IMG/VR virus record: IMGVR_UViG_3300035180_001778
Coordinates: 124,001 to 188,000 of that record
Length of the DNA stretch: 64,000 bases
Strand: one strand, 5' to 3'
This document shows positions 12,801-52,605 of the stretch, one piece after another. Within the stretch, counting starts at the first letter, position 1. Each line of letters opens with the position of its first letter. Made by a program: the position numbers and the translations under genes. The notes under the pieces were generated by a model. The model did not search any database. It worked only from the letters and a program-made list of their open reading frames with translations, and was not told the origin of the DNA.

Positions 12801-13042
12801 TAGAAGTCGTCGACCGAGTGCCGAGGAATCGAGAGGGAGATCGTCGCCGACCCCGGAGCGCCGTCAACACTCAAGTCGGTCTGAATCGACGTGATGTACT
12901 TGTTCCAGTCGAAGCGCTTCCGACAACTCGGGCAGCCGACGATATCCGTCTCCCCGTTGATGTAGACGACCGCATCGGGCCCCATCACAACAGTGGGTCG
13001 AACTCCCCCCTGGTACGTACCCTGAAAAGGACCTCGCGGCAT
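9806..13042 (-). CDS. Baseplate hub protein (gp27/gp44-like)
   Basis: Hub-type motifs 'GFEFYMDSDGSIVFKPPFY' and 'RPELRLGFPI...WYITGISHNI'; between the tube initiators and the spike; C-terminal coiled coil. Confidence 0.7.
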   Translation of the reverse strand: MPRGPFQGTYQGGVRPTVVMGPDAVVYINGETDIVGCPSCRKRFDWNKYITSIQTDLSVDGAPGSATISLSIPRHSVDDFYFDGNPIITEMMEVEIYKKGFYLVEGVPQYYPTFWGIITEVSDSYAGGEHTVSLHCSDILKWWELCKMNINPAFTAAAGQSGRSLFGNVFFGMNPYDVIWTLAQSSFGDVVIGTGSLISLYKEQGGQKQVFDSALSDIMLYWEERFSRIRSKLVLYGVNGVAVRGDSLYEAYRAGKKGTVGKPFASQAVRTANGGADGGQMVFDPTDPSVVAFRTQFQNAGQVNFWQSEYQTKLELATAAKEAIGFEFYMDSDGSIVFKPPFYNLDVLSNKPLSWIQDIDIIDWDLSDSEAEVITQVQMQGAFGGSVDYGMPQEVTPFTSVTDYHLLRKYGWRTHTYNSEFLGDPQLMFYHGLDILDRLNSKRHRASVTIPMRPELRLGFPIYLAPKDQVWYITGISHNIQFGGRATTTLTLTAKRQKFFAPKGIGSIEMTGWKDSSGGQSTPAVGKTTLPYTSKQLSKGGAFNLKIGEAAQLPPNVASAQGVTKDNPYAPLILRHPKTGRFVGYPNVVMAYTRPFSPSPDDLTKNKGQKKAGYNPYTDKSVKPKIEQTAKALSDYLDKALVNGDEDRLREKHLTNRYQYGLNSAGVYVYAHDKSKVIGEIVLLPTKNLTVSPESKTKTFPGSTAMIRPVSDERGFEVIGHFRYGRGVSLRDGSLVASGGVNEKANVDLQLALSGDLFASLNAQSQGLTSVVSVYASPADAVARLQPEDLQTAGIMNPDTKQAEFTNTGTNFVDSAPLGSPEQVGVPASVEAGQLSRALTLAELTLSKDVTLPDEKCACTLGRSDLAFINVGYQVKILNGTAPDNNSLLQPGTDGVSLFGNQGLTNLGDPVSDNLAVPSPAEVATKVDTFLYTLYQALDAPHQEYEKAIRGDILTEQQDSGSGPFGPNTISDFNPPFSSPNRAELGDPEAIANQVNSSSASLATNWQNFGDKLRAGAEKAQLQGDIQKLKGEIADLKAELLALPPSAQVLIQQVQNQIGKLQQEIMQAQLKIASLASV

Positions 13043-13051
13043 TTATTCTTC

Positions 13052-14719
13052 CTACACCGAAGGTGTCCCCAAGGGAAATGACTTCGGGGCACCGTACGTG
13101 AAGTGGGGATCGGTTTGATCGAGGAGATAGGTGGCCCGCACACTGAACGAGAAGCTGTACTCCAGCGTGAACGGGCTCAGGTCGGATTCGGTGACGTTGA
13201 AGGAGTCGAAGGACCCGATGTAGATGATGTTGTCGTAGAAGATGTAGATCGACCCCACAAGGGCGAGATTGGTAGTCTTCTGCGTCTGGGTGGACGTGGC
13301 ATCCGGGAGCCACACGCCCCCGTTGTTGCGGTACAAGAGCCAGAGCGATAGGAAGTTCTGGTAGGAGAGGGAGAAGTTCCGAGCCATGCGAGTGAGCCCG
13401 GGGCTGTTGCCCACGCTCCCAAGGGATCCCCCGTTCGCATCGATCGCGTAGAACCCCGCGAGCTTCCCGGAGCCTTCGACCTTGTCTTGCTGCTCCCCCC
13501 AATGCTCGACGATGGGTCCGTTCCGACCCCAGTTCCCATCGGAGACGACCTTCTCCGAGGAGACCTTGAAGGACGCAGGGTTGACCAACATCCGTAGGGG
13601 AGGCGTGTTGGCCATCTGGTCGATGGCCAGCTTGACTGCTTTGGCAGCGGCTCTCTGCACGTCTTGGAACTTCTGCCCCAAGCCCGACGTATCGAGAGAC
13701 GTGTTCGCAGTCTTCGAGTTCTCCTTGGACGCCACCTGTGCGGAGGCACTACCCGACCCCTGCCACCCCGCAGTGGAGTCCGCGTTGACGGGGTGGGTGT
13801 TTGCATCAATGTCCACCCCTGAGAGCATCTTGTCGAGGTCTACCAAGGCGTACAGATGGAGGCCGTCGCCCCCGACTAGGTCCTTGCCTCCCGCTCGATG
13901 CACCTCCCACGAGCCATCTTCCTGTCGAGTCCACACCCGATCGGATCTGGAGATGCCCCTGTACCCAGCAACATTCTGCCCGCCGCTGATATCCCGTTCT
14001 GTGAAGTACCCAGCTTCGGCAGACCCCGAGGTGATGGTCTCGATGATCGCCATGTGTTGCTGCCCACCCGTGATGTAGAAGATATCCCCGGGTTTGGGGG
14101 TCACTGAGAACTTGCCGAACTTGTCGAGGCGAGCCCCCTTTCGGGCGGCAATCGCCAGGACATCAGCGTTCGCCATGCTCCACTTGTAGGGGTTCGTCAG
14201 CTCCGGCTCATTGAGCCCCAGTTCGCGTAGCCAGCCTCGTACGGTGATCGCACACGAGGCCTGTTCCGAAAGAGCGACTGCCGTTGAAAGAGGATCGATC
14301 GCCGGGTCCGCGAGGAGATTCAGGTAGCGTTCATTTGTCGAGGCATTCGTGCTGAGACCCACATAACTCTGGGCAAGTGCCAGAGCCTTGTCCCGGGCAT
14401 CCTGGTTGAAGCCAGCGTTGGAGCCCCCCGAGGTGCCAGAGCTTGTCCCCGCTGCGGGCGTCCCGAGAATCGACGAAAGAGAGGCCGACCGATCCAGGTT
14501 GCGCCCCGTCACGTTCGCCGAAGGAGGGAGAACCCCGATGATGAAGGGCTTCACATTCTTCGCAGAAAAAGGGATCTGCGAAAGAGGGATGTACTCCGCG
14601 GACAGGTAGTCAGACGTGGTGCTGAGCGAGGAGAAGAACGAGAGCAGGTTGTAGATGTTCGGCGGGTGATAGTCCGCCGTCTGCTCAATCTGCTTCGCGA
14701 TACTGTTCTCGTTTGCCAT
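13052..14719 (-). CDS. Tail tube-initiator-like protein with internal CHAP/NlpC-P60-like domain
   Basis: Likely start MANENS; 'SCAITVRGWL...PKPGDIFYI...HMAIIE' resembles a Cys/His amidase; C-terminus (VNPASF...EHWGEQ...YIGSFDSFNVTESD.SPF) is paralogous to 15321-15968. Confidence 0.6.
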   Translation of the reverse strand: MANENSIAKQIEQTADYHPPNIYNLLSFFSSLSTTSDYLSAEYIPLSQIPFSAKNVKPFIIGVLPPSANVTGRNLDRSASLSSILGTPAAGTSSGTSGGSNAGFNQDARDKALALAQSYVGLSTNASTNERYLNLLADPAIDPLSTAVALSEQASCAITVRGWLRELGLNEPELTNPYKWSMANADVLAIAARKGARLDKFGKFSVTPKPGDIFYITGGQQHMAIIETITSGSAEAGYFTERDISGGQNVAGYRGISRSDRVWTRQEDGSWEVHRAGGKDLVGGDGLHLYALVDLDKMLSGVDIDANTHPVNADSTAGWQGSGSASAQVASKENSKTANTSLDTSGLGQKFQDVQRAAAKAVKLAIDQMANTPPLRMLVNPASFKVSSEKVVSDGNWGRNGPIVEHWGEQQDKVEGSGKLAGFYAIDANGGSLGSVGNSPGLTRMARNFSLSYQNFLSLWLLYRNNGGVWLPDATSTQTQKTTNLALVGSIYIFYDNIIYIGSFDSFNVTESDLSPFTLEYSFSFSVRATYLLDQTDPHFTYGAPKSFPLGTPSV

Positions 14720-14721
14720 GG

Positions 14722-15324
14722 TCAGAACCGTACTGCTTCGAGTACACGACACGCAACAGAAGGAAGAGTCAAAACCTCTCCCTCATAGACTTCGCCACTA
14801 AACATCTCAATTGAATCAGAGCGAACAGCAATTTCAGCGAATGCCTGCTTGTGTCTCCCACACAAGATGCTGAAGGCATCTATATCAACGATGATTTCAT
14901 CACTAGACGCGTGCGCAGAGCACAAGGCACCCCCATTCCAATCCTGCCGAGACTCTGTTGCAAATCCGATCCCAGAAAACCATCGAGCTGTTCTTTCGAC
15001 AGTGCTCCATTGAAGTACCTTGTTCGGCCGACTCAAGACAGAACCCACTTCAGGAAGTGGGTCTTGATGTGTCAACCTACGCCCATAAAACAAGGACACA
15101 GAGGAAGGATTGACGAATGTTTTCAACCATTTGCGGAACTTGACGTCCGCCTTCCAAGCCTTGTAAACCCAGTCCAAAGCAGTTGGACGGCTATTCCCCA
15201 TACAACTGGCAAGACCCACACTGAAATTACGTAGAGAGTCTTTCTCTCGGTCCCCCAAAATGGCAAAGGGGTCCTCCGAGGACCAGAATCTCTTCGCGAC
15301 GCGATCCGTGATTGCCATGGTCAT
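14722..15324 (-). CDS. Putative ADP-ribosyltransferase-fold protein
   Basis: Motifs LFYGRR / QWSTVERTARWF / YEGEVL in ART-like order; lower GC than flanks; N-terminal DRVAKRF tag. Confidence 0.4.
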   Translation of the reverse strand: MTMAITDRVAKRFWSSEDPFAILGDREKDSLRNFSVGLASCMGNSRPTALDWVYKAWKADVKFRKWLKTFVNPSSVSLFYGRRLTHQDPLPEVGSVLSRPNKVLQWSTVERTARWFSGIGFATESRQDWNGGALCSAHASSDEIIVDIDAFSILCGRHKQAFAEIAVRSDSIEMFSGEVYEGEVLTLPSVACRVLEAVRF

Positions 15325-15968: not shown

Positions 15969-15996
15969 CTACCCCTAGCTGGTGTATAGGTGCCCC

Positions 15997-16194
15997 ATGA
16001 GCGAACGCCTTACACTGTGCCCGGAATGTAAATCTCGTCGGGTGTCAACCGTGAAGGTTTTGAACCCCGAAACCAGCGACATGAATTGCAACGCGGATCT
16101 GAAGTGTGAAGAACCCGCGTGCGGACATCTCTGGGTTGGCCGAGTCACGAGCCCGCATTACAAGAAGCTCCGCGACTCCGGGCGAATCATCTGA
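15997..16194 (+). CDS. Small zinc-ribbon protein
   Basis: CPEC...CEEPACGH; ATG 10 nt after GGTGTA. Confidence 0.65.
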   Translation: MSERLTLCPECKSRRVSTVKVLNPETSDMNCNADLKCEEPACGHLWVGRVTSPHYKKLRDSGRII

Positions 16195-16200
16195 GGACCC

Positions 16201-16440
16201 ATGGATGACGACCTGTATTCCTACTGGTCTCTTTGGGTCTTCCCCCCGCGGCCCAAAGAGACCCCCCACGAGATAATCAGGCGTGCAATCGCAAACTTCG
16301 CGCTGCCCTTGCCTCTGATACGGAGCCGAGAGGCCCCGACCTATGGACGGCGTGGTCCCATAGGTCCTTATGCGGGGGCTCGAAGGACTTTCCTCGTCGA
16401 GGATCTGCCTGACTTCCCGATCATTGATCGAGATCCCTGA
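16201..16440 (+). CDS. Small protein with capsid-like C-terminal peptide
   Basis: GAGGA RBS; ends RRTFLVEDLPDFPIIDRDP. Confidence 0.55.
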   Translation: MDDDLYSYWSLWVFPPRPKETPHEIIRRAIANFALPLPLIRSREAPTYGRRGPIGPYAGARRTFLVEDLPDFPIIDRDP

Positions 16441-21122: not shown

Positions 21123-21125
21123 GAG

Positions 21126-22124: not shown

Positions 22125-22150
22125 AATCCCATCCGGTGTATATTCGGGGC

Positions 22151-22387
22151 ATGTCTGAACCCCTGATGCTTCAAGTGATCGACTACAACGAAACCCGGGA
22201 AATCCGGGAAATCCGGCCCACCTACGAAATGGATGGAAGGGTCAGTAACCTCGAACCCGTCAAGAACTCGGAACGGGCATTTCTCAGTCTGCAAATCCCG
22301 GACGGCCCTGTCGTGAAGGTGGAAGTCCGGCATGAGGACTTCGAAAAGCACCTCATGCCGGACCTTCAGAAGACCGCTACAGGGTGA
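22151..22387 (+). CDS. Hypothetical protein
   Basis: MSEPLMLQVIDY...; ATG 10 nt after GGTGTA. Confidence 0.6.
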   Translation: MSEPLMLQVIDYNETREIREIRPTYEMDGRVSNLEPVKNSERAFLSLQIPDGPVVKVEVRHEDFEKHLMPDLQKTATG

Positions 22388-23087: not shown

Positions 23088-23090
23088 GAC

Positions 23091-24904: not shown

Positions 24905-25192
24905 CTACCTGCATTTGCACATGACCAGCCAAGCGGCTGGATTCGTGTTTTGCTGCTCGAAGGACAAAACTTGGTTCGGGTGCGCGCATGCTATCGACCC
25001 GGTATCCGACCACTTCACCTGACCCTGGTCCAGGCAAACGCCTCGCCGAACGTTCCAGTAGTGCTTCAACCCGAAGTAGAAAATGGACACCAAAAGCAAC
25101 ACCCAGATCAGGATGTTGTACTTCCTGTGGGTCCAGAACTCGCCGGAGGAGATTGAAGGCTTCGTCGGGGACGGTTCACGGTAGGGATCCAT
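24905..25192 (-). CDS. Small single-TM membrane protein
   Basis: ILIWVLLLVSIFYFGL hydrophobic helix; GGTGTA-N10-ATG start. Confidence 0.7.
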   Translation of the reverse strand: MDPYREPSPTKPSISSGEFWTHRKYNILIWVLLLVSIFYFGLKHYWNVRRGVCLDQGQVKWSDTGSIACAHPNQVLSFEQQNTNPAAWLVMCKCR

Positions 25193-25201
25193 GTCCCTCC
25201 T

Positions 25202-25525
25202 CTACACCAAAAGGAGGGACCGACCCCAAGAAGACATGAAGGCCTTGATGTTTTCCCGCCCAATGCAGTTCTCAGAATGGATCTCGAACTCCGGCGGATT
25301 GACGCAGCCGAACTCGTAAAAGAGCCAGTTCAAGAACCGCATCGCGGTATCATCACCCCCAAGATCGTGGTCGAGATCCATGAACATGGGAGGCCCATGC
25401 GCTTCGACCAAGAGACGAGCCTCATCAGATGATGTCGCGCCAAGGAACCCCTCGGGAGTCCACCGAGCCCGAAGATCCGGGTCGGGATCCGCGAGCTGGT
25501 CGTCAAGCCAAAGTCTCCAGGTCAT
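25202..25525 (-). CDS. Cyclic-phosphate-processing receiver-like domain protein
   Basis: LWLDD...R..PEGF...DLDHDLG..D...IHSEN..G pattern. Confidence 0.75.
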   Translation of the reverse strand: MTWRLWLDDQLADPDPDLRARWTPEGFLGATSSDEARLLVEAHGPPMFMDLDHDLGGDDTAMRFLNWLFYEFGCVNPPEFEIHSENCIGRENIKAFMSSWGRSLLLV

Positions 25526-25530
25526 AGGGC

Positions 25531-25705: not shown

Positions 25706-25948
25706 TCAGTAGGGGAATTCGCCAAGCTGGTCCAGGATGGACTTTCGGATCACCGCACCATCTTTCCTGGTGACAGGTTCGATCTCCAGCTCGACGATCT
25801 GAAGCTGACGATCACGGTCATCGTAGATCGTCTCCTCGATCGAAGGCTTGTCGTAGAATCGGTCCGAGGTGGCGTCCGGGTCCTTGTGTAAGGGTGCGTA
25901 CATGCGGTCGCAGGTTTCGTCGGTCCCCAAAATATCGTAGATCGGCAT
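25706..25948 (-). CDS. Hypothetical acidic protein
   Basis: ORF with AGGA RBS in the minus-strand run. Confidence 0.6.
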   Translation of the reverse strand: MPIYDILGTDETCDRMYAPLHKDPDATSDRFYDKPSIEETIYDDRDRQLQIVELEIEPVTRKDGAVIRKSILDQLGEFPY

Positions 25949-25983
25949 GGTTGTCCTACAGGGTCCTGGCGAGCCCGATCAAC

Positions 25984-26841
25984 TCAGACGCGCCGGAGAA
26001 GCTCGATCATGTGCGTGACGAGGATCAGCGTACCCTGTTCTGGCCCCCAGAGCCATAGCCCATCCGTGTGCCACTCCGGAAGCTCCCCCATGGCTCTTTC
26101 CATGTCGTTGAAGACGCTGGCGGCCGTGAAGAGGTTGAACTCCAGGTAGGCGCTCTTGCGAGACACCAAGACCTTGCGCCGGCTGTCGGTCTCCTCGCTG
26201 ACGAGAAGCCCCCTCAAGTGCCCCATCCGGAACAGCTCGACCCAACCCCCAAGGAGCTGGTCATGGGTCTCCGCGAGCACGAACCCGTTGGACCCGACGT
26301 CGAGAACCTTCACCTTGGGCCACGACCCGACCACAGGGCCCCCGCCGTCAAGATGGTCCCGAATCCACCCCACGGCGGTGGTGAGCCGCTCCCCCAGCTC
26401 GCGCTTCGAGAGACCCTCTTCGGGGAAGAACGACCGGAGAAGCCGGAAGAAGCGCCCACGCTCGGGTTCGATGTGCCCCAACATCGAAAAGCCCCGCCGA
26501 TGTATGAGGTCCACCGACGCCACCACCCCAGGCATCGCCGGGTGAATCGCCAGGGTCCGATCAAAGAAGAGAGCCATCGCGAAGATGGTGTCGAGGTCGC
26601 GGATTCGGTGCGTAGCGAACAAAAGCGGGAAAGGCCTCCCAAGGATGAGATCCTCGAAGAAGCTCGTCAGGGCGCCAGGGTCCGCTTGTCCGAACCCTGC
26701 CCCATGGTGCTCGTAGACGAAAAGGCCCGGGTCGCCCGCTTGCTCACGACTTGCCCCTGTCTCGAACGCGACAGCATCAGGAACGATGACGGGGAGCGTC
26801 GGATCTACGCGGGCGTTGAAAGTGATTGGTGTAGGCATCAC
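25984..26841 (-). CDS. DHH-like phosphoesterase
   Basis: YEHHG, HRIRDLD and VDLIH metal-binding-like motifs. Confidence 0.5.
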   Translation of the reverse strand: MMPTPITFNARVDPTLPVIVPDAVAFETGASREQAGDPGLFVYEHHGAGFGQADPGALTSFFEDLILGRPFPLLFATHRIRDLDTIFAMALFFDRTLAIHPAMPGVVASVDLIHRRGFSMLGHIEPERGRFFRLLRSFFPEEGLSKRELGERLTTAVGWIRDHLDGGGPVVGSWPKVKVLDVGSNGFVLAETHDQLLGGWVELFRMGHLRGLLVSEETDSRRKVLVSRKSAYLEFNLFTAASVFNDMERAMGELPEWHTDGLWLWGPEQGTLILVTHMIELLRRV

Positions 26842-26864
26842 CTAGATGCCTACACCAATCACTT
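26820..26864. repeat. Perfect 20-bp inverted repeat with 5-nt loop over a start codon
   Basis: AAGTGATTGGTGTAGGCATC-accta-GATGCCTACACCAATCACTT. Confidence 0.95.
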
Positions 26865-27041: not shown

Positions 27042-27381
27042 AATCTCTACGTACTCCGCAGTGTCCGTAGTTGAACCCGTACAGGAACGTCGCCCCTGAA
27101 GGGGGCCGGAACTCGAAGTCTGCCTGCCCGCAACACGAGTGCGAAAGCTCGAAGGCAAGACGATCCGCCGGGTTGGACACATCGGCAAACCGGAAGGAAT
27201 CCGAGCACTCGTACGCCTCGTGATCCTCCCAAATCGTGAGGATCTCAGCGTCCACGTAGGCAGCGATATCCTCGTCGTATAGGGTGGGGAGTACCTCCGC
27301 GAGTGCCGTGCGGCCACCCTTGTAGTAAGCGAAGGCCGCGGGGGAGAGGTCCAGGACGAGGAAACGGGGATCGATGCTCAT
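27004..27381 (-). CDS. Hypothetical protein
   Basis: ORF with AGGA RBS; CCG...FLYGFNYGH motif. Confidence 0.6.
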   Translation of the reverse strand: MSIDPRFLVLDLSPAAFAYYKGGRTALAEVLPTLYDEDIAAYVDAEILTIWEDHEAYECSDSFRFADVSNPADRLAFELSHSCCGQADFEFRPPSGATFLYGFNYGHCGVRRDYANRIHGHERRA

Positions 27382-27417
27382 GGGAGTCCTACAGCTAGGA
27401 CCCCCATCCGATCAACC

Positions 27418-32688: not shown

Positions 32689-33042
32689 TTAACCCCCCGT
32701 CATCGGCGGAACAAGGAGAACCTGGGGAGCCGTGGCATCGAACTCCTTGATCTGCTCGCCCTCGGTCGCCGGAACCTCTTCGGCGTTCTTGGGCTTGACG
32801 AACCGCATCCGACCCGCGTCCGCGTCGAAGTTCTCCAGCTCTTCCCCCTTGCGGACCATCTTCTTCTCGTCCTTCGTGAAGCTCACGAGACGGAAGGCGA
32901 GGTAGCCCTTGCTTGTCAGGTCGACGAAGAGCGCCCGAGCGGTCTCGACCTCTTCCGGGTTGGTCGGGTCCCACGAATGCTTGGTGTCGCCCGCCTTGCC
33001 CATGATGGCAAATTGGTGCGTCGAGGTTGCGAGATCAGTCAT
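32689..33042 (-). CDS. Small protein ending in di-Gly (PPMTGG)
   Basis: GDTKHSWDP...ARALF..L..KGY.AF...EFD....LLVPPMTGG; GGTGTA-N10-ATG start. Confidence 0.75.
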   Translation of the reverse strand: MTDLATSTHQFAIMGKAGDTKHSWDPTNPEEVETARALFVDLTSKGYLAFRLVSFTKDEKKMVRKGEELENFDADAGRMRFVKPKNAEEVPATEGEQIKEFDATAPQVLLVPPMTGG

Positions 33043-33052
33043 GGTCTTCCCT

Positions 33053-33058
33053 TACACC
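33053..33058 (-). promoter_or_regulatory. GGTGTA promoter-like motif (representative copy)
   Basis: GGTGTA exactly 10 nt before ATG at 7 genes (starts 13042, 15997, 22151, 25192, 33042, 33560, 51687). Confidence 0.75.
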
Positions 33059-33062: not shown

Positions 33063-33560
33063 TCACTCGTAGCCCTCGATGACCCACTTCTGGTATTCCT
33101 TTTCCAACCAGGAATCCAGAGGCCCCGAGTGTCGGAAGAGATACTCCCTGTAGGTCGTCCCCGTCCGATAGTCCCGAGTCCCCGGCGGAGCCACTCGACC
33201 CGTTGCATCGTACTCGACGCCGACGTTGAAGAAGTCCGCCAGCTCTTCCTCGATGCGACCTTGAGCCCAGCGGGCAAAGGGACCGATCGGCCCATGGCGG
33301 AAAGCCACCCGGCTCGGCTGGAGTGCCACCACGAACCCCACAGCCTCATCCTGGCAGAAGAAGGGAAGCTTGCGAGTCTCTTCCGTGGAGACCGCTGTGC
33401 CCGGGAGGAAGACCATCCAGACGGGACCCCCATCCTCGAAGGACGTGAGGACGATTTTCCAGTCTGTATTCAACGTCCGAGCAACCGCAGCCGTGAGGGT
33501 TGCCTCGAAGGCCTCTTCAGTCAGCTCGCCAGGGAGGTCGATGTAGCCGTAGTTCGCCAT
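33063..33560 (-). CDS. Hypothetical protein
   Basis: 165 aa; GGTGTA-N10-ATG start. Confidence 0.7.
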   Translation of the reverse strand: MANYGYIDLPGELTEEAFEATLTAAVARTLNTDWKIVLTSFEDGGPVWMVFLPGTAVSTEETRKLPFFCQDEAVGFVVALQPSRVAFRHGPIGPFARWAQGRIEEELADFFNVGVEYDATGRVAPPGTRDYRTGTTYREYLFRHSGPLDSWLEKEYQKWVIEGYE

Positions 33561-33605
33561 TGAGGGATCTTACACCGACCCCAAAATCCCGCACCCCAAA
33601 TAGGC

Positions 33606-33639
33606 GAAGACCCCCAAGATAGCCTTCCGGGGGGTCCTC
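33606..33639 (-). terminator. Stem-loop, probable 3' end of the ncRNA
   Basis: GAGGACCCCCCGGA-aggcta-TCTTGGGGGTCTTC GC-rich hairpin; the U-tract is weak. Confidence 0.6.
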
Positions 33640-33690
33640 TAGTGCCGCTTTTTACACGACGTCACAGCGTTGGATCAGATTCAAGCTTAG

Positions 33691-33788
33691 ACACCACGTC
33701 CTACCGCTAGACCACCTCCCTGCGAGAAGCTCGACCCATGTACGAGCGCCTTGCAGGGAGGGCGGGATTTGAACCCGCGTTTTGGCGT
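33691..33788 (-). ncRNA. Permuted tRNA-like domain 2
   Basis: ACGCCA-AAAC-[GCGGGTTCAAATCCCGC]-CCTCCCTGC...GCAGGGAGG-TG-[GTCTAGCGGTAGGAC]-G-TGGTGT; 9-bp acceptor stem and 6-bp closing stem. Confidence 0.85.
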
Positions 33789-33854
33789 ATTGACCTGACC
33801 CTTAGATTGATGTCGTATCGGTTCTGCTGAGTCTGGAGTGAGAAGAAGAATCGT

Positions 33855-34001
33855 TTCCCCTCGCCTTTGCCTCTGCCGTCTGGGCTATCCCCCTACTCAA
33901 CCACCCAATGCGCTTTGCTAAACCCCAGTGAAGGAGCCCACACACTGACTGGCTGAATAGGGGGAGCAGGAATCGAACCTGCCCTTTTGGGGAGAGAGGG
34001 T
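33855..34001 (-). ncRNA. Permuted tRNA-like domain 1
   Basis: [GCAGGTTCGATTCCTGC]-TCCCCCTATTCAGCCA...TGGTTGAGTAGGGGGA-TA-[GCCCAGACGGCAGAGGC]; 16-bp extended acceptor stem. Confidence 0.85.
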
Positions 34002-34062
34002 TACTGAAGCTGACTCTTACTCTGAGACTGCACTCAAATCTTTAGTACACCATATCTCGACG

Positions 34063-34797
34063 CTAGGCGAAGAGATTGTGGAGAATCGTCGCCCCGATGT
34101 GGCGGTTCTCGACCTCGATGGTGTTGGCCTCCTCACGCGCGAACTTCACGGCGATCCGGAGCTTCGAGACGCGGTCCTTCAGCACGTTGACCCGAGTCGC
34201 CGTGAGGGCCCCCGAGCGCTTGACGACCGTGTACTGTCCGACCGCCTTGTCCTCGTGGAAAATCTCGGTCTGCGCCGGATGGTACTGGGTGGGCTCCGCC
34301 TTCGTGATGACGGTGGGCGTCTTCCGCGTCCGCTGCGTGATGGCCGGAGCCGTGGCGAAGCAGGCCTGGTTCTCGTCGTAGGTCCACGACTCGGCCGGGT
34401 CGAGCGTCGGGAGCGAGCCGATGAACGTGGTGAGGTCGTCGAGCTGGTGCTCCAGGAAGAGCAGCACGCCGACGGGGACATCCGCGAGGATGACCTTCCC
34501 ATCCACGACGATGTTCGCTCGCGCGATGGTGTTCCCCCACTCCTTCGTGGCCGTGATGTCGAAGGCCTCCGTGAGGACCTTCACCGTGTGCTCGATGGCA
34601 TCCGCGGCCTTGAGCTGGACGTGCTTCAGCTCCGGCGGGAGCCGCTCTTCCTGCGTGTCTGAGAAGGGCGCGTAGGTCCGCGAGAACCCTTCGAGCTGCG
34701 CCGGCTTCTTCAGCTCCTTGTGGTAGGTCTTCAGCTCGTCGTACGCCTTCGACTTGAGACCCTTTTCGACCGCGATGATCTGGCAAAGCTTGCCCAT
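34063..34797 (-). CDS. Conserved protein of unknown function (244 aa), adjacent to the tRNA-mimic RNA
   Basis: MGKLCQIIAVEKG...SRTY.P...LPPE...DVPV..LLFLE.QL...LPTLDP...HPAQ...SGA...AVKFAREEAN; recalled as a family seen in Actinobacteria and other bacteria; very GC3-rich. Confidence 0.85.
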   Translation of the reverse strand: MGKLCQIIAVEKGLKSKAYDELKTYHKELKKPAQLEGFSRTYAPFSDTQEERLPPELKHVQLKAADAIEHTVKVLTEAFDITATKEWGNTIARANIVVDGKVILADVPVGVLLFLEHQLDDLTTFIGSLPTLDPAESWTYDENQACFATAPAITQRTRKTPTVITKAEPTQYHPAQTEIFHEDKAVGQYTVVKRSGALTATRVNVLKDRVSKLRIAVKFAREEANTIEVENRHIGATILHNLFA

Positions 34798-34936
34798 GAT
34801 GAAAACCTCTTCTGATTCGATTTGCTGATGCTGATGACCCGAGCCCTCTACACCACGTCCCCGACGTAGCATCGATTTTATGGAGAGGTTGATCGGGGCC
34901 CCCTCTTGGGTGTAGGCTTTTCACGAGGCACACCCC

Positions 34937-35179
34937 ATGATCAAACCCAACGCCAAAGAAGTCGCTCGCGCCGATGGAGGCTTCGCTTGCGTCAGCCGTC
35001 CTGCGGCTGGCGGGGGCTTCAACGTCGCGGTTGTCCACCTGGACGGCACCCCCGTCTTCAAGATCCAGCACGTCGAGACCAAGGACCAGATCGGCAAGGC
35101 CATCGCCTGCGACCTGCGCATGATCGACAAGTGCGGCTTCAACTGCCCCATGGCCGATGCTTCGAGGCATCGCCGATGA
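34937..35179 (+). CDS. Hypothetical protein
   Basis: 80 aa, GAGG RBS, divergent from 34797. Confidence 0.65.
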   Translation: MIKPNAKEVARADGGFACVSRPAAGGGFNVAVVHLDGTPVFKIQHVETKDQIGKAIACDLRMIDKCGFNCPMADASRHRR

Positions 35180-35735: not shown

Positions 35736-36368
35736 TCAGTGCAGATGGGTCGCGACCTCACCCCACTGCTTGAGGTCATCCGTCATCCGACCGACGTCTT
35801 CCTCAGTGTTGACGACCTTCTCCCCATTCATCGTCATGAAACGCTTCCCCGAGATCATCTCTTCGAGGTGATGAAGCTTGGCCTTCGTCCACCTCTTGAG
35901 GATCGACAGGTCTGCTTGGGGGTATTTCTTGACGAAGTCGAGAGCTTCGTTCGCCCCCGAGTATTCGGTGAGAGCGTCCGAGTGGACGTGTTGCTTCTCG
36001 TCCAGGAACAGGGCTTCGGCAATCGCCGAGTACGTTGAAGCCTTTGGGGCATTCCAGCGCTGCGTCTTGGGGTTCATCGTCTGGCTCACGAATCGAAACC
36101 CCTTGCCCGGCTTCATCTCGATCCAGTATCGGATTTTGGTCCGAAGCTTGAACCCGTACGGGTAGTCGTCCACCACGTAGGCGGTCGCTTCGCTGTCGTG
36201 CCCGTAGAGAGGGGTGTGGCTCGCGACGAGCACTCGACCAGCCACGCGGTTTGCGAGGGCTGCGAGTCGAGCTGCCATGACTTCGCGAGAAGGGCCCGCG
36301 GAGTGTGCATAGTCGAGGAGACCTTGCACTGCGGCGATGAACTGTCGGGGGGAAGCGATCTTATACAT
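35736..36368 (-). CDS. Hypothetical protein with virion-type N-terminal tag
   Basis: KIASP...LANRVAGRV leader, then AYVVDDYPYGFKLR...W...K.STY domain. Confidence 0.75.
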   Translation of the reverse strand: MYKIASPRQFIAAVQGLLDYAHSAGPSREVMAARLAALANRVAGRVLVASHTPLYGHDSEATAYVVDDYPYGFKLRTKIRYWIEMKPGKGFRFVSQTMNPKTQRWNAPKASTYSAIAEALFLDEKQHVHSDALTEYSGANEALDFVKKYPQADLSILKRWTKAKLHHLEEMISGKRFMTMNGEKVVNTEEDVGRMTDDLKQWGEVATHLH

Positions 36369-36427
36369 TCTTGCCTCAGATACGGGCAGGAATAGAAACT
36401 ACACCGAGGGGGAGGGAGTACCTCGGC

Positions 36428-43568: not shown

Positions 43569-43572
43569 TGAT

Positions 43573-45107: not shown

Positions 45108-45116
45108 CGGACGCTC

Positions 45117-46867: not shown

Positions 46868-46870
46868 GAT

Positions 46871-48094: not shown

Positions 48095-48130
48095 GCTAAC
48101 TCCTCACTGTGATGCTTCGAAAGAAGGTTA

Positions 48131-49404: not shown

Positions 49405-50744
49405 CAGTATTCCGTGTTCTCCCACGCCAAAGAACGACCTCGAAGCTGTACCTCCGCCGGGACATCAGGATGGTCGGTGGGGATAGCTTCCGCTTCGTCC
49501 TCGGGTCCCGAAGGAATGAAGCCAGCGGCGGGGTATCTCCGGGGGCCGTCCATGGGCACCTTGTACCGGATGTCCTTCTCGTCGAAGTGCCCGATGTTGA
49601 AGTGTTGCTGGAGGATCATGCCTCGGTTCGTCGGCATTCGAACGGCCCCGATGCTGTACCGTTCTCCGTTGACCTTGACCAAGAAGTCACGGTGAGCGAG
49701 CAAGGGTGAAGGCCCCGTCCAGGCTTCGTAGGTGTGCTCAATCGTACGACCAATGTCCTTCTGGGATATCTTCCGTTCCGCATCGTCGGGGGCGATGATG
49801 ATGTCGTAGGGCCCCTCATAGCCATCGACGATCCCCGTCCCGAAGCAGATGATGCAGTCGTTGATGGGCTGGTTGTGGAAGTCATCCTCGATGCAGGGGC
49901 AAGGGAGCCCCACGTTCTTTCGGAGGAAGACCTTCACCCGCTCCCCACCCTGCTCCAGAATCCAACGGTTCCGGTGGACAGCTTCACGCCAGATGTAGTC
50001 GAGCTTCTCGATCTCGAAGCTCGACGTCGAGATCGCGTTCTCCAGGGGTGTCTCGACGACTTTCCCTGTCGAATCGCTCGCCAAGATACCCACCGTCGTG
50101 ACTCGGTAGAACACCCGCTGAGAGAGGTCGGTACGAAGCAGGGACCTCACCCGCCGATAGGAACAGAGGACCTGGCTGTCCTCCTTCGGGTACACAGGAA
50201 GGACAGCCTTCTGGGTCGCCACGTCGGCCTGTACGGAGCCGTCGATCTCGACTTCACCCACGAAGCCTCGGACGGCTTTCACGACCGCCTGAACCCCATC
50301 CACGTAGACGTAGACATCCTCGGGGCTGTCCGCGTTCGTCCCCTGCGAGCCGGACTTCACGATGGGGTAGTGGAGCGTCTTGAAGACGTACCGGCGGAGG
50401 TCGTGGCTCACGCTGGCCTGACCCTTCAAGACGAAATTCGCCGAGACGTCTTCCTCGACAATCAGCTCGATATCTGTGCGATCACGCCAATAGGTCGACC
50501 CCACAGGGAGATTCGTCAGCCGTTGAAAGGGCCCGAATTCACTGTCGAAGCTACGGTAGACGTTCACCCCCAAAAGGATGAAGTCTCCGTTACGGCTGAG
50601 CTGGGAAGGGTCGTCCCATACCAGGTCGAAGATCCACGCTTCGTACCCACTGGTGAGGAAGAGATTCAACGGCGGAGCCGGCCACGGAGCCCTGGAAATC
50701 TCCAGGTTGGTGATCGGTCGGTCTCGTTGAGTTGCGTACGGCAT
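49404..50744 (-). CDS. Head closure/neck protein
   Basis: GERVKVF..K..G..CPC...C..CFGTG.V.GY...WTGPSP...RDF pattern. Confidence 0.6.
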   Translation of the reverse strand: MPYATQRDRPITNLEISRAPWPAPPLNLFLTSGYEAWIFDLVWDDPSQLSRNGDFILLGVNVYRSFDSEFGPFQRLTNLPVGSTYWRDRTDIELIVEEDVSANFVLKGQASVSHDLRRYVFKTLHYPIVKSGSQGTNADSPEDVYVYVDGVQAVVKAVRGFVGEVEIDGSVQADVATQKAVLPVYPKEDSQVLCSYRRVRSLLRTDLSQRVFYRVTTVGILASDSTGKVVETPLENAISTSSFEIEKLDYIWREAVHRNRWILEQGGERVKVFLRKNVGLPCPCIEDDFHNQPINDCIICFGTGIVDGYEGPYDIIIAPDDAERKISQKDIGRTIEHTYEAWTGPSPLLAHRDFLVKVNGERYSIGAVRMPTNRGMILQQHFNIGHFDEKDIRYKVPMDGPRRYPAAGFIPSGPEDEAEAIPTDHPDVPAEVQLRGRSLAWENTEY

Positions 50745-50774
50745 GTGCCTTACAGAGGCCCAGAGACAAAAAGA

Positions 50775-51059
50775 TTACCCTTTCGGGATCGGCTTCAAGG
50801 GGAATAGCTTCCCCGTCTCGTCAATATCCACAGGGAAGTCCGGCGGTAGCCCACGATCCATGAGGATCTTCTGGAAGACCTTGTCCCGCTCATCTCGAAG
50901 AGGCCGCGCTGCCACAAGAAGGCGGATCTTCTCTTCCTCCAAGTCGAGGAGCTGGGCCGCGAGCATCTTCCGGGTCTCGTCCACTTCCGCGAGGTGCTTC
51001 ATGGTGGTCGCATCGACCGGGTCGTTCACGGTGAGCTTCTTCTCGGATTCGTTACTCAT
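50775..51059 (-). CDS. Small coiled-coil protein
   Basis: MSNESEKKL...; helical. Confidence 0.65.
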   Translation of the reverse strand: MSNESEKKLTVNDPVDATTMKHLAEVDETRKMLAAQLLDLEEEKIRLLVAARPLRDERDKVFQKILMDRGLPPDFPVDIDETGKLFPLKPIPKG

Positions 51060-51112
51060 TTTCATCTCGTTGTTGATCGTCGGGGCTCGAAGCTTGTACG
51101 ACGTGTATGTCT

Positions 51113-51364
51113 ATGAACCAAAGTACCGAAGTCCCCCTGTCCATGCCGATGGACGTGGAGATGGCCATCAACCTCGCAACGGATGGGGCCCTTCACGCCC
51201 TTTTCCACATCTGCAAGCAGACCGGGTGGACGCCGCACGTCGTGAACGTCCCCGAAGCCTCCGGCCTCCGCATGATCTTCATGGCCACGGACGCGAAGGA
51301 CAAGACCTGCTACTTCGACAGCGCGGTGCTCAAGCCGCCGGCCGCTCCCCTGTCGCTGAACTGA
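51113..51364 (+). CDS. Hypothetical protein
   Basis: Plausible codon usage; fills the gap between minus-strand genes. Confidence 0.55.
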   Translation: MNQSTEVPLSMPMDVEMAINLATDGALHALFHICKQTGWTPHVVNVPEASGLRMIFMATDAKDKTCYFDSAVLKPPAAPLSLN

Positions 51365-51687
51365 TCCCCGTCCACGTACTTCTTCGCCAGGAGACGAAGA
51401 AACACCTCGAACTGTGCCGGGTTGATCCCGTTGCGGAGAAGCGCATCCTTGCGTGCTTTCTCGGACAACGACTGGGAGCATGTCGAGAGGTGGCAATCAA
51501 CCCGGTGATTGCACTCGGTGCATCTGTGATTGTCGCTCTGAAGAAGCGCTGCCTTCCGACGCTGGATCGACAACCCTCGCGGGTCCGGCCGGTCCTTCCA
51601 CAAGCGACATCGGGCTCGATGTCGCTTCATCGGATTCAGGCCCCGCCCTAGAAAACCGCAAATACAAGGGTGAACGAAGGCGGGCAT
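51310..51687 (-). CDS. Cys/His-rich zinc-binding protein
   Basis: CICG...H...C, CTEC...H...C; GGTGTA-N10-ATG start. Confidence 0.6.
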   Translation of the reverse strand: MPAFVHPCICGFLGRGLNPMKRHRARCRLWKDRPDPRGLSIQRRKAALLQSDNHRCTECNHRVDCHLSTCSQSLSEKARKDALLRNGINPAQFEVFLRLLAKKYVDGDQFSDRGAAGGLSTALSK

Positions 51688-51696
51688 GCTCCGTCC

Positions 51697-52605
51697 CTAC
51701 ACCGCCGCCGACCCCTGCTCCTCGGGGTACATCAGCGTGAAGAACTTCATCTCCGAGACCTGATTGGGGATCACGTCCCCCGTCGCGAAGACGGCCACCT
51801 GTCCGCGAGGAACCTCCCGCGAGACGTGGATCTGAGCGCCGTGGAAGACCCCCATGATCCCCTTGCGGAGGATGACGGCTTGGCTCTCGATGTCCAGGAC
51901 ATCGCGTCCGTACTTGCGGAGGTCCGCATACTCGTATGCGTTCATGTAGATGTGCTCGACCTTCTTGTCCTCAGACCCATGGGGGGCGAAGACCCTCTCC
52001 GCGTAGGCCTTCAGCACAGCCGCTTTTCGGGCCACAGCATCCGGATGGGGGCCCACCGAAACAACCCCCCCATGGTCGCAGAGGTTCACGAGCTTCGTCC
52101 GGATCAGCTCCGGAGTGATCACAAGGGTGGGGAAGTCTACGTCGTCTGCAAACCCACAGGCAAAGCCCGGAGGAACTTCCTTGGAGAGGAAGACCTGAGC
52201 GTTCCACAAGCTCCCCATGATGCCAGCCCGAAGAAGTTCTCCGTTGTGTTGCGCGTCAAAAGACGCGGAGCATTCGCTCCGCAGAGTCATGTATTCTTCC
52301 ATGTTGAGGTAGATCCGAACAACACGGACATCATTCCGCTCGATATGTGCATAGACCTTGCTGGCCAGAGCCTCCAGAAGCGTCTCCCCCTTGGTCAGAA
52401 GGCCCTTGAGAGCGACGGCCGCGTTTGCGGTCATCACCGCATCCCGGATGTGCCGAATTGCCACCGATTGGTCCTCCCCCGCGGGAGTACACGCGAGAAC
52501 GACCGAGGCGAACGTCTTCGCGGCATCCCGGATCATCTCGTACTTCGGGAGCTGGTCTTCGGTGGGGCGGTGGTACGTGAAGATGTGATTTAGATCGAAT
52601 GCCAT
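51697..52605 (-). CDS. Acb2/Tad1-like hairpin domain fused to two tandem capsid-protein-like repeats
   Basis: N-terminal FTYHRP..DQ..KY..IR..A...P...DQSVA...VMTANAAVA; repeats IYLN..EY..LR...GIMG.LWNAQVFLSKEVP.G and IYMN..EYADLR...GIMG.FHGAQIHVSREVP.G. Confidence 0.65.
   Translation of the reverse strand: MAFDLNHIFTYHRPTEDQLPKYEMIRDAAKTFASVVLACTPAGEDQSVAIRHIRDAVMTANAAVALKGLLTKGETLLEALASKVYAHIERNDVRVVRIYLNMEEYMTLRSECSASFDAQHNGELLRAGIMGSLWNAQVFLSKEVPPGFACGFADDVDFPTLVITPELIRTKLVNLCDHGGVVSVGPHPDAVARKAAVLKAYAERVFAPHGSEDKKVEHIYMNAYEYADLRKYGRDVLDIESQAVILRKGIMGVFHGAQIHVSREVPRGQVAVFATGDVIPNQVSEMKFFTLMYPEEQGSAAV

What the first reader, a model, noticed from the sequence alone, without database searches (positions are those of the whole stretch)
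13040..51703. GGTGTA-N10-ATG: phage promoter giving leaderless mRNAs
Seen: GGTGTA lies exactly 10 nt before the ATG of seven genes on both strands (motifs at 13053, 25203, 33053, 33571, 51698 on minus; 15981, 22135 on plus), several without any SD. Further copies precede 26841, 34797, 34937, 36368 and the ncRNA. The geometry equals a -10 hexamer starting at TA plus 6 nt, which places +1 on the A of ATG. Inference: an extended -10-type promoter, mostly for accessory genes, read by a host or phage sigma factor; the host would need to tolerate leaderless translation.
Basis: partly seen in the sequence, partly recalled or inferred. Interest (0 to 1): 0.65.

Follow-up and report, generated by a model that had tools for sequence, protein, structure and literature searches.

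The report
Huge-phage promoter for leaderless genes
A seven-base signal (YGGTGTA) lies exactly ten bases before the start codon of about 80 genes in this uncultivated 350-kb phage and in its distant relatives; it is most likely a compact promoter whose messenger RNAs begin directly at the AUG, which is a known kind of arrangement carrying a new, clade-wide motif.

Summary
GGTGTA-N10-ATG occurs 7 times in the window against 0.09 expected. In the 350-kb phage genome, 77 copies have an ATG at N9-11. No other hexamer is enriched to a similar degree at that offset.

The same motif and spacing are enriched in six relatives that share only 51-63% protein identity. Between close relatives the hexamer changes 15 times less often than its flanks.

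Motif genes lack Shine-Dalgarno sequences and start almost only with ATG, whereas other genes in the genome have SD sequences and often use GTG or TTG. Four tRNAs begin 10-13 nt after the motif. In 29 divergent gene pairs the 32-69-nt spacer holds little beyond two back-to-back motifs.

The best reading is a -35-independent promoter for host core RNA polymerase that gives leaderless mRNAs. No transcription start has been mapped, because no RNA run holds this DNA.

The motif is not a textbook extended -10. It is one of two promoter classes; the other is GGTTGATC-N16-TGTAGGA-N5-ATG, with 94 copies. The phage also carries a conserved pair of very divergent sigma-like genes outside the window. No phage RNA polymerase was found. 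Which sigma reads GGTGTA is unresolved.

The parts
13040..13058 (-). Class I site: GGTGTA-N10-ATG. The ATG at 13042 opens a 1078-aa gene (9806-13042) that is conserved in 35 IMG/VR loci.
   Evidence: hexamer kept in the 96-100% identical relatives
15981..15999 (+). Class I site: GGTGTA-N10-ATG. The ATG at 15997 opens a 65-aa ORF (15997-16194).
   Evidence: weak PHROG 'transcriptional regulator' hit, E 0.005
22135..22153 (+). Class I site: GGTGTA-N10-ATG. The ATG at 22151 opens a 78-aa ORF (22151-22387).
25190..25208 (-). Class I site: GGTGTA-N10-ATG. The ATG at 25192 opens a 95-aa ORF (24905-25192).
33040..33058 (-). Class I site: GGTGTA-N10-ATG. The ATG at 33042 opens a 117-aa ORF (32689-33042).
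33558..33576 (-). Class I site: GGTGTA-N10-ATG. The ATG at 33560 opens a 165-aa ORF (33063-33560).
51685..51703 (-). Class I site: GGTGTA-N10-ATG. The ATG at 51687 opens a 125-aa ORF (51310-51687).
26839..26856 (-). GGTGTA-N9-GTG at the start of a 285-aa ORF (25984-26841). The hexamer is one arm of a perfect palindrome whose other arm carries the + strand copy at 26828-26833.
34046..34051 (-). GGTGTA ahead of a ~470-nt stretch with no ORF (33576-34040). The predicted +1 is at 34035. This is a probable non-coding RNA with two T-arm-like elements.
34849..34854 (-). GGTGTA 51 nt before the ATG at 34797 (DUF7873 protein, 34063-34797). If it is a promoter, the transcript has a leader of ~41 nt containing a GAGG.
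34889..34939 (+). Hybrid site: TTGATC-N14-GGTGTA, in the same register as class II, followed 22 nt later by the ATG at 34937 (80-aa ORF).
36400..36405 (-). GGTGTA 31 nt before the ATG at 36368 (210-aa ORF, 35736-36368). If it is a promoter, the leader is ~21 nt.
25946..25982 (-). Class II site: TTGATC-N16-TGTAGGA, then TGTA-N8-ATG at 25948 (80-aa ORF).
27379..27415 (-). Class II site: TTGATC-N16-TGTAGGA, then TGTA-N8-ATG at 27381 (125-aa ORF).
51073..51109 (+). Class II site: TTGATC-N16-TGTA-N8-ATG at 51107 (85-aa ORF).

Best explanation
YGGTGTA, at -17 to -11 relative to the A of ATG, is the sole conserved recognition element of a -35-independent promoter read by a bacterial-type RNA polymerase: the host core enzyme plus a sigma factor. 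T-12/A-11 marks the upstream edge of the melted -10 region. Transcription starts 10 nt (+/-1) after the hexamer, at a purine preceded by C (C-1/A+1). In about 80 cases that purine is the A of the start codon. The mRNA therefore has no 5' leader and no Shine-Dalgarno sequence, and the 5'-terminal AUG is used for initiation. The same element also starts some leadered mRNAs, a few tRNAs and a non-coding RNA.

Shown here: the motif, its spacing, its conservation, its selective constraint, the absence of SD, the ATG exclusivity and the presence of sigma-like genes. Inferred: the start site, the leaderless state, and which sigma reads the motif.

On the sigma, I lean towards the host primary sigma (about 50%) for three reasons. 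The geometry is that of a primary-sigma -10 element. Two relatives show TAnnnT. The hexamer is invariant across phages, while the second promoter class and the phage sigma-like proteins diverge. One of the two phage sigma-like proteins remains a serious alternative (about 35%).
For: 1. Positional enrichment: 7 versus 0.09 expected in the window; 51/14/12 sites at N10/N9/N11 genome-wide; z = 28 and unique among hexamers.
2. Logo: T-18, Y-17, GGTGTA, C-1 (33 of 51), A+1, and nothing conserved from -56 to -19, so there is no -35 element.
3. Clade-wide use: GGTGTA-N10-ATG counts versus reversed-pattern controls are 44 vs 1, 43 vs 2, 27 vs 3, 55 vs 3 and 16 vs 4 in five relatives, and 15 on a 205-kb contig of a sixth. 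It is the top or near-top hexamer at -16 in each genome.
4. In G003 and G004 the motif continues as TAnnnT, with T at -7 in 25 of 27 and 39 of 55 sites.
5. Constraint: in orthologous sites of G000 and G001, hexamer bases changed 2 of 252 times against 162 of 1359 for the other upstream bases (p = 2e-10).
6. SD 4-mers occur at 12% of motif genes, equal to background (14%). The remaining genes show a GGAG/GAGG peak at -12 to -9.
7. Start codons are 43 ATG: 1 GTG at N10, against 90 ATG: 29 GTG: 13 TTG at SD-linked starts.
8. Transcription rather than translation: four tRNAs in three phages begin 10-13 nt after the hexamer, one of them exactly at N10. My arithmetic from the frequencies expects about 0.2. 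Of 47 intergenic copies without an ATG, 38 point at the next gene.
9. There are 29 divergent pairs in which CAT-N10-TACACC...GGTGTA-N10-ATG fills a 32-69-nt spacer. That leaves no room for a separate promoter plus leader.
10. Six sites carry the class II upstream element TTGATC in exact register with GGTGTA. This ties the hexamer to a bipartite, sigma-type promoter architecture.
11. Sigma-like genes are present and no phage RNA polymerase was found.
Against: - No 5' end has been observed. Only DNA runs hold this sequence.
- The motif is not the canonical TGnTAnnnT. TG abuts TA, and in this phage T at -7 is present in only 15 of 51 sites. In G002 position -7 is mostly A. That is awkward for a primary sigma, which normally needs T-7.
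- The host is unknown, so its tolerance of leaderless mRNAs and its own promoters could not be examined.
- The one bacterial bin that holds a related phage contig shows no excess of the motif outside the phage-like contigs (about 26 vs 20 control in ~4.6 Mb). If that bin really is the host, this argues against a host housekeeping signal.
- Class II sites place ATG 2 nt closer to TGTA. The two classes therefore cannot share both one register and one start rule.
Confidence: 0.72

Rival explanations
1. This keeps the same promoter and the same leaderless outcome, but the reader of the motif is a phage-encoded sigma. One of the two adjacent, very divergent sigma-like proteins (302 aa and 285 aa; genome c[280163..281071] and the gene downstream, outside the window) would direct host core polymerase to YGGTGTA without a -35 element, much as T4 gp55 reads a single -10-type element.
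For: - The pair is conserved in G000, G002, G003, G004 and G005.
- Orthologues pass or approach the Pfam Sigma70_r2 cut-off: 29.3 bits in G004, and 20.1 bits for the second gene in G002.
- 22 of the top 24 structural matches of the folded G000 protein are sigma domain-2 structures, with Z 5.4-7.6. They include ECF sigmas and entries for a T4 late-transcription (gp45-dependent) complex and the AR9 holoenzyme.
- Positions -10 to -7 differ from phage to phage, as expected if specificity co-evolves with a phage factor.
- T-7 is missing in this phage.
- There is no motif excess in the non-phage contigs of the only bacterial bin that carries a relative.
Against: - GGTGTA is invariant while the sigma-like proteins are only 30-39% identical between phages.
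- The phage-specific class II motifs covary with phage identity and look like the better partners for these sigmas. Class II-type elements also precede the sigma-like gene in G000, G004 and G003, which suggests autoregulation.
- A phage without a virion polymerase needs some promoter that the unmodified host enzyme can read. Canonical sigma-70 promoters are not enriched.
- The Z-scores are middling and the focal protein itself scores only 14 bits on Sigma70_r2.
Confidence: 0.3
2. GGUGUA is an RNA-level signal inside longer transcripts. It would be either a non-SD ribosome-recruitment element or an endonuclease processing site that creates or marks the start codon 10 nt downstream. On this reading it is not a promoter.
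For: - The strict spacing to ATG and the absence of SD would also fit a translation signal.
- 17% of motif genes lie within 15 nt of the upstream gene.
- GGTG is complementary to part of the 16S 3' tail (my knowledge).
Against: - The motif precedes tRNAs and a non-coding stretch at the same 10-13-nt spacing.
- It occurs in register with a -35-like element 14 nt upstream.
- Back-to-back divergent pairs would require both promoters to lie inside the neighbouring genes.
- A GGTG 12 nt from the ATG is too far for SD pairing (inference).
- C-1/A+1 is the polymerase start preference (PMC7776599).
Confidence: 0.08
3. The motif is the promoter of a phage-encoded, non-canonical RNA polymerase that sequence models miss. 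Precedents are the phiKZ/AR9 non-virion polymerases and the two-barrel enzymes of P23-45 and crAss-like phages, which use short promoters close to the start site.
For: - Short start-proximal promoters are typical of such enzymes, for example AR9 AACA-N6-TA/G (PMC5312081).
- P23-45 hides polymerases in proteins that have only a DxDxD signature (PMC10770324).
- The genome has many large proteins without any family match.
Against: - Pfam Rpb2_6, Rpb1_2 and the T7-type RNA_pol family are absent from six genomes, including one complete genome.
- The only DxDxD conserved across relatives lies in a 1435-aa protein whose model is all-beta. It matches phage tail-tip and baseplate proteins and an annotated tail fibre.
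- The DDDGD in the 2091-aa window protein is DDDGN in relatives.
- The presence of sigma-like genes implies use of host core enzyme.
Confidence: 0.06
4. GGTGTA is the binding site of a phage regulator (repressor or activator), or a DNA-level signal unrelated to initiation. It would sit near start codons only because intergenic regions are short.
For: One window copy is part of a perfect palindrome (26823-26861), and several copies face each other, as operators often do.
Against: - Most copies are single, asymmetric and strictly oriented with the gene.
- Spacing to the ATG is fixed to +/-1 nt, which no operator requires.
- The C-1/A+1 start dinucleotide is conserved together with the motif.
Confidence: 0.04

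Closest known systems
-10 motif adjacent to ORFs in Deinococcus-Thermus (TANNNT a fixed distance before the start codon; leaderless genes), PMC12340547. The same logic holds for the mycobacterial leaderless transcriptome (PMC3898074, PMC4633059).
   Same: A -10-type element lies at a fixed short distance upstream of the start codon. There is no SD. Other genes in the same genome carry GGAG-type SD sequences. A -35 element is optional.
   Different: There the element is the generic TANNNT of the host primary sigma. Here the conserved part is the upstream half plus an extension (YGGTGTA), and T-7 is dispensable in this phage. The motif is phage-specific and shared by a clade of huge phages.
Thermus phage phiYS40 middle/late genes (leaderless transcripts; shift in host IF2/IF3). 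This is summarised in PMC3594737. The primary paper, Sevostyanova et al. 2007, is not held in the library.
   Same: A large phage without its own polymerase expresses many genes as leaderless mRNAs from -35-less promoters read by host polymerase.
   Different: The host, the motif and the scale are different. No IF1 or IF3 genes were found in these phages, and no experimental data exist for them.
Extended -10 promoters of Thermus phage P23-45 middle/late genes and T4 middle genes (PMC3950348, PMC4124052).
   Same: These are -35-independent promoters that depend on sigma domain 2 contacts with an enlarged -10 element. Phages use them to escape their own shut-off of -10/-35 promoters.
   Different: The canonical form is TG, one spacer base, then TATAAT. 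Here TG abuts TA, two further G's are invariant and the 3' half of the hexamer is free. No gp39- or AsiA-like factor was sought.
T4 late promoters read by gp55 (TATAAATA at -10, no -35). The promoter details are from my own knowledge; a T4 late-transcription (gp45-dependent activation) complex, entry 7d7d, was among the structural matches.
   Same: A single 7-8-bp element at -10 is read by a minimal, highly divergent phage sigma on host core enzyme.
   Different: There is no evidence here for a clamp-dependent activator. The sequences are unrelated. Assignment of the sigma-like proteins to this motif is unproven.
ECF sigma promoters (-35 and -10 blocks, 16-18-bp spacer, pyrimidine-purine at the start; PMC7776599).
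   Same: Class II sites (GGTTGATC-N16-TGTAGGA) have this bipartite, rigidly spaced layout. Their -10 block is YGTA, and the phage sigma-like protein is structurally closest to ECF sigma domain 2.
   Different: Class I, the finding itself, has no -35 block, and ECF sigmas normally require one.
AR9/phiKZ non-virion RNA polymerase late promoters (AACA-N6-TA/G; TATG), PMC5312081.
   Same: Jumbo phages with a very short conserved block about 10 nt upstream of a conserved start dinucleotide.
   Different: Those phages encode split beta/beta' polymerases and their transcripts have 26-491-nt leaders. Here no polymerase genes were found and the start falls on the ATG.

Membership tests
Sigma-70-type extended -10 promoter | TG at -15/-14, separated by one base from the -10 hexamer (TGnTATAAT) | tested here: not met
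   With +1 on the A of ATG, TG is at -14/-13 and abuts T-12/A-11. G-16 and G-15 are also invariant.
Sigma-70-type extended -10 promoter | -10 hexamer with A at -11 and T at -7 | tested here: inconclusive
   A-11 is invariant. T-7 is present in 15 of 51 sites in this phage and 7 of 38 in G002, but in 39 of 55 in G004 and 25 of 27 in G003.
Sigma-70-type extended -10 promoter | No requirement for a -35 element | tested here: met
   No information content from -56 to -19 in 51 aligned sites. Only 6 sites carry TTGATC upstream.
Sigma-70-type extended -10 promoter | Recognition by sigma domains 2/3 of the host holoenzyme; open complex from -12 to +1 | not testable with these tools
   The host is unknown and no biochemistry is available.
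Leaderless mRNA genes | The transcription start coincides with the first base of the start codon | not testable with these tools
   No RNA run holds the sequence. Support comes only from geometry, from tRNA 5' ends at N10-13 and from 32-38-nt divergent spacers.
Leaderless mRNA genes | No Shine-Dalgarno sequence upstream of the start codon | tested here: met
   SD 4-mers occur at 12% of motif genes against 14% background. Other genes show a clear GGAG/GAGG peak.
Leaderless mRNA genes | Strong preference for AUG as the 5'-terminal start codon | tested here: met
   43 ATG: 1 GTG at N10, against 90: 29: 13 (ATG:GTG:TTG) at SD-linked starts.
ECF-sigma-type bipartite promoter | -35 block and -10 block at a fixed 16-18-bp spacing | tested here: not met
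   Not met for GGTGTA sites. Met for the separate class II: TTGATC-N16-TGTA in 90 of 94 sites.
Promoter of a phage-encoded RNA polymerase (T7-like, phiKZ/AR9-like, two-barrel) | The phage encodes such a polymerase | tested here: not met
   Pfam RNA_pol (PF00940), Rpb2_6 and Rpb1_2 are absent in six genomes; the control genomes also gave no hit for PF00940, so that single negative carries little weight. The only conserved DxDxD protein folds as an all-beta tail-like protein. Very divergent enzymes cannot be excluded.
Sigma-70 family (for the phage sigma-like protein, genome c[280163..281071]) | Region 2 (core binding and -10 recognition) | tested here: inconclusive
   Pfam Sigma70_r2 scores 14.3 bits for the focal protein (cut-off 24) and 29.3 bits for the G004 orthologue. 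22 of the top 24 structural matches are sigma domain 2, with Z 5.4-7.6, which is in the range the tool calls middling. PDB sequence-profile and Foldseek searches were not significant.
Sigma-70 family (for the phage sigma-like protein) | Region 4 helix-turn-helix (-35 recognition) | tested here: inconclusive
   Residues 241-302 form a small helical domain with no specific match. A separate G002 protein has clear r2 + r4, but no counterpart was found in G000.

The most novel reading that the evidence does not exclude
A clade of uncultivated 300-450-kb phages runs close to a third of its genes as leaderless mRNAs from two dedicated promoter classes. Each class would be read by one of two adjacent, extremely divergent phage sigma factors; one of them has a ~100-residue insertion inside domain 2. 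On this reading the invariant YGGTGTA is a complete promoter for a -35-independent phage sigma that starts transcription exactly on the AUG. The phage would then couple its own transcription specificity to a translation mode (5'-terminal AUG) that bypasses competition with host SD-led mRNAs.
Probability: 0.3. Interest if true: 0.75.

Novelty: new variant of a known kind. Interest (0 to 1): 0.55.

Why it matters
Huge phages are known almost only from metagenomes, and how they run their gene expression is largely unknown. This finding gives a concrete regulatory map that can be read from sequence: about 170 promoters of two classes in one genome. One motif is conserved across phages that share only about 55% protein identity. 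That helps gene-start annotation in this clade, because many starts can be fixed to the base. It gives short elements that can be tested directly in vitro with the two sigma-like proteins. It also adds a large viral example to the debate on how widespread leaderless translation is outside Actinobacteria, Deinococcus-Thermus and archaea. The kind of arrangement is already known, so the result extends existing knowledge and does not overturn it.

Tried and rejected
- Megablast of 20 kb against GenBank phages found no match.
- The sequencing-run search returned four DNA runs (sediment and microbial-mat metagenomes) and no RNA run, so read laying was not used because contigs cannot show 5' ends.
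- Pfam Sigma70_r2 gave no hit on the focal genome directly. The sigma-like gene was found only through orthologues.
- The PDB profile search and Foldseek for the sigma-like protein were not significant. A protein search of GenBank phages found nothing.
- Cryptic polymerase hunt: the DDDGD in the 2091-aa window protein is not conserved. The conserved DADGD lies in a 1435-aa protein that looks like an all-beta tail or baseplate protein. This lead is rejected.
- Host identification failed. No relatives are drawn for virus records. The genome-contig scan with the 1078-aa protein was empty. The second scan found only a contig in a bin labelled Lysinibacter and a small contig in a bin labelled Parcubacteria group bacterium, which are weak hints.
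- Tunturiibacter phage Tunturi_5, a cultured jumbo phage sharing a tail-fibre domain, shows no motif excess, at 4 vs 2.
- IF1 and IF3 genes were not found in the phages.
- The canonical sigma-70 promoter scan showed no excess.
- TGTA alone is not enriched before ATG. It needs either GG or TTGATC-N16.
- TTGGGG/CCCCAA upstream of motifs is mildly enriched at variable positions, most likely from terminator hairpins of upstream units.
- GGGTACGA near four tRNAs occurs in too few copies to judge.
- A literature search for the hexamer as a promoter returned only unrelated papers.
- Not used: the search of protein representatives (the word search was sufficient), complex prediction, and alternative genetic codes.

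Full report
**What the sequence is.** The window is bases 124001-188000 of a 350,469-bp IMG/VR virus record. The record is linear and CheckV rates it 73% complete. It has 59.7% G+C, most genes lie on the minus strand, and third-codon-position G+C is about 0.78. It carries 40 tRNA genes and a tmRNA, so it is a 'huge phage'. It has no close relative among GenBank phages. Only DNA runs from sediment and microbial-mat metagenomes hold it. My self-trained codon-usage gene caller gives 406 genes covering 83% of the genome.

**The observation.** The hexamer occurs 25 times in the window against 9.2 expected. Genome-wide there are 210 hexamers. An ATG follows at N10 in 51, at N9 in 14 and at N11 in 12, while other spacings stay at background. 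Nearly all of these ATGs open ORFs. Among all hexamers at offset -16 from any ATG, GGTGTA has z = 28 and the next has z = 7. Single-mismatch variants are hardly enriched.

The logo of the 51 N10 sites is T-18, Y-17, GGTGTA at -16 to -11, C at -1 (33 of 51) and A+1. Nothing is conserved from -56 to -19 or from -10 to -7.

**Conservation.** A 1078-aa protein whose gene carries the motif retrieved 35 related IMG/VR loci. Over whole records, the pattern count against its reversed control was:
- G001 (96% identity): 44 vs 1
- G002 (452 kb): 43 vs 2
- G003 (437 kb, terminal repeats, complete): 27 vs 3
- G004: 55 vs 3
- G005: 16 vs 4

A 205-kb contig in a bacterial bin, 51% identical in another protein, has 15. 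In each fully retrieved genome GGTGTA at -16 is the top or near-top signal. In G004 and G003 the motif continues as TAnnnT, with T-7 in 39 of 55 and 25 of 27 sites. In G002 it reads GGTGTATATAC. Between G000 and G001, hexamer bases at orthologous sites changed 2 of 252 times against 162 of 1359 for the other upstream bases (p = 2e-10).

**Promoter or translation signal.** Six lines of evidence point to transcription initiation on the ATG.
- Motif genes carry SD-like 4-mers at the background rate (12% vs 14%). The other genes show a GGAG/GAGG peak at -12 to -9, and 46% of them lie within 15 nt of the upstream gene, so they are operon-internal.
- Start codons at N10 are 43 ATG to 1 GTG. SD-linked starts are 90 ATG, 29 GTG and 13 TTG.
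- Four tRNAs in three phages begin 10-13 nt after a GGTGTA. One is a tRNA-Ile whose first base is exactly N10+1. Two are suppressor-type tRNAs. From the hexamer frequency I estimate about 0.2 such cases by chance.
- Of 47 intergenic copies without an ATG at N9-11, 38 are co-oriented with the next gene. One precedes a 470-nt non-coding stretch in the window.
- Across five phages, 29 divergent gene pairs have start codons 32-69 nt apart. In the tightest pairs the two motifs abut or lie within a few bases of each other and fill the spacer.
- Promoter strand always follows gene strand along the genome.

**A second class.** Intergenic k-mer enrichment revealed GGTTGATC and CTGTAGGA. They form a rigid bipartite element. 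TTGATC-N16-TGTA has exactly N16 in 90 of 94 cases. An ATG follows TGTA at N8 in 49, N9 in 8 and N11 in 14, again with C-1/A+1. Four such sites are in the window.

TGTA alone is not enriched. It needs GG, which gives N10, or TTGATC-N16, which gives N8. Six hybrids carry both elements in one register. Orthologous class II motif bases are also constrained, at 5 of 290 vs 145 of 957.

Unlike GGTGTA, this class differs in every phage:
- G004: CTCAAAGGT + CGTAGTAC
- G003: GGGTTAAGATC + TGTAAT
- G002: CCTTAAC/G + CGTACTAT

By strict definitions, 59 genes are class I and 57 are class II out of 406. Both classes are dense in regions of small genes and rare in the 100-235-kb block of large, partly structural genes.

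**Who reads it.** Pfam domains of multisubunit polymerases and of T7-type polymerase are absent from all six genomes, although the T7-type family also failed to hit any control genome, so that negative is weak. Because P23-45 hides polymerases behind a bare DxDxD signature (PMC10770324), I screened all proteins of 350 aa or more. The only DxDxD conserved in relatives lies in a 1435-aa protein belonging to a family of more than 390 huge-phage proteins. Its model is all-beta and matches tail-tip and baseplate proteins. Its N-terminus matches an annotated tail fibre. I reject it as a polymerase.

Sigma70_r2 hits in relatives led to an orthologue in this genome at c[280163..281071], 302 aa, outside the window. 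Pfam support is weak for the focal protein (14 bits) and passes the cut-off in G004 (29 bits). Its model has mean pLDDT 71.5. In an exhaustive structural search, 22 of the top 24 matches were sigma domain 2, mostly ECF sigmas, at Z 5.4-7.6, a range the tool itself calls middling. The next gene (285 aa) is orthologous to a G002 protein with a 20-bit Sigma70_r2 match. So a conserved pair of divergent sigma-like genes exists.

In G000 the first of these genes has a class II promoter at N8 and a GGTGTA 32 nt upstream of the ATG. In G004 and G003 it is preceded by their own class II-type elements. That pattern resembles ECF-style autoregulation.

**Interpretation.** I conclude that GGTGTA is a -35-independent promoter element for host core polymerase, and that most of its transcripts are leaderless (confidence 0.72). 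The geometry (TA at -12/-11, start at the seventh base after a hexamer, C-1/A+1), the TAnnnT in two relatives, and the invariance of the hexamer against the divergence of class II and of the sigma-like proteins make the host primary sigma my first choice (about 50%). The missing T-7 in this phage, the non-canonical TG-TA junction, and the lack of motif excess in the non-phage contigs of the one bacterial bin with a relative keep a phage sigma in play (about 35%). RNA-level, regulator-site and cryptic-polymerase readings are less likely, for the reasons given under rivals.

**Comparison with known systems.** The arrangement works like the -10-adjacent leaderless genes of Deinococcus-Thermus (PMC12340547) and of mycobacteria (PMC3898074). 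It also resembles the leaderless middle/late genes of Thermus phage phiYS40 (as summarised in PMC3594737) and the -35-less extended -10 promoters of P23-45 (PMC3950348, PMC4124052). It differs in the motif itself, in the dispensable 3' half of the hexamer, in being shared by a clade of huge phages, and in coexisting with a second, phage-specific bipartite class and two sigma-like genes. AR9 and phiKZ use similarly short start-proximal promoters, but with their own polymerases and long leaders (PMC5312081). I therefore rate it a new variant of a known kind.

**Limits.** No start site has been seen. The host is unknown. Gene starts outside the motif classes come from a simple caller. The structural matches are of moderate strength.

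Noticed in passing
window 25946-25982(-), 27379-27415(-), 51073-51109(+); 94 sites genome-wide: A second, rigid bipartite promoter-like class: GGTTGATC-N16-TGTAG(G/A)A, with ATG 8 nt after TGTA. It is as abundant as the GGTGTA class, and its sequence differs in every related phage.
   Followed up: yes
genome c[280163..281071] and c[279337..280194] (L103:895-1803:- and L103:69-926:-), outside the window: A conserved pair of adjacent, very divergent sigma-like genes. The first has a ~100-residue insertion between regions 2.2 and 2.3 and sits behind both promoter types.
   Followed up: partly
genome 302161-302233(+); also G004:1355-1430(+): tRNAs with stop-codon anticodons: tca in this phage (called 'SeC' by ARAGORN but only 73 nt long) and tta in a relative. 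Each has GGTGTA 11-12 nt upstream. ORFs read normally under table 11, so the role of these tRNAs is unclear.
   Followed up: no
window 33576-34040(-): A ~470-nt stretch without an ORF, downstream of a GGTGTA. It holds two T-arm-like elements (GGTTCGATTCC and GGTTCAAATCC; weak matches to the tmRNA 3' end, E 6e-5 and 0.06). No Rfam family reaches its threshold.
   Followed up: partly
window 26823-26861: A perfect palindrome, TGATTGGTGTAGGCATC...GATGCCTACACCAATCA, carrying two facing GGTGTA copies at the junction of two minus-strand genes. It could be a terminator hairpin, an operator, or both.
   Followed up: no
genome c[100402..104709] (L001:402-4709:-): A 1435-aa protein belonging to a family of more than 390 huge-phage proteins, 50-70% identical over 600 residues. 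It has an invariant W-x-E-x-D-x-D-G-D. The fold is all-beta and tail- or baseplate-like, so the acidic motif may be a metal site of a structural protein.
   Followed up: yes
genome 250229, 254015, 263596, 265715 (- strand): tttGGGTACGA lies 3-7 nt upstream of four tRNA genes in the tRNA cluster. It could be a processing signal or another start signal, but there are too few copies to test.
   Followed up: partly
genome 322632(-)/322670(+); 28 further pairs in G001-G004: Divergent genes whose start codons are 32-69 nt apart, with two back-to-back GGTGTA motifs; in the tightest pairs (32-38 nt) little else fits in the spacer.
   Followed up: yes
L123 (contig JBBAQX010000001.1, 205 kb): A related huge-phage contig sits in a bacterial bin labelled Lysinibacter (Actinomycetota), a phylum rich in leaderless mRNAs. 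This may be a binning artefact or a hint at the host.
   Followed up: partly
window 34063-34797(-): A full-length match to Pfam DUF7873 (E 1e-90). This is the only motif-associated window gene with any family assignment.
   Followed up: no
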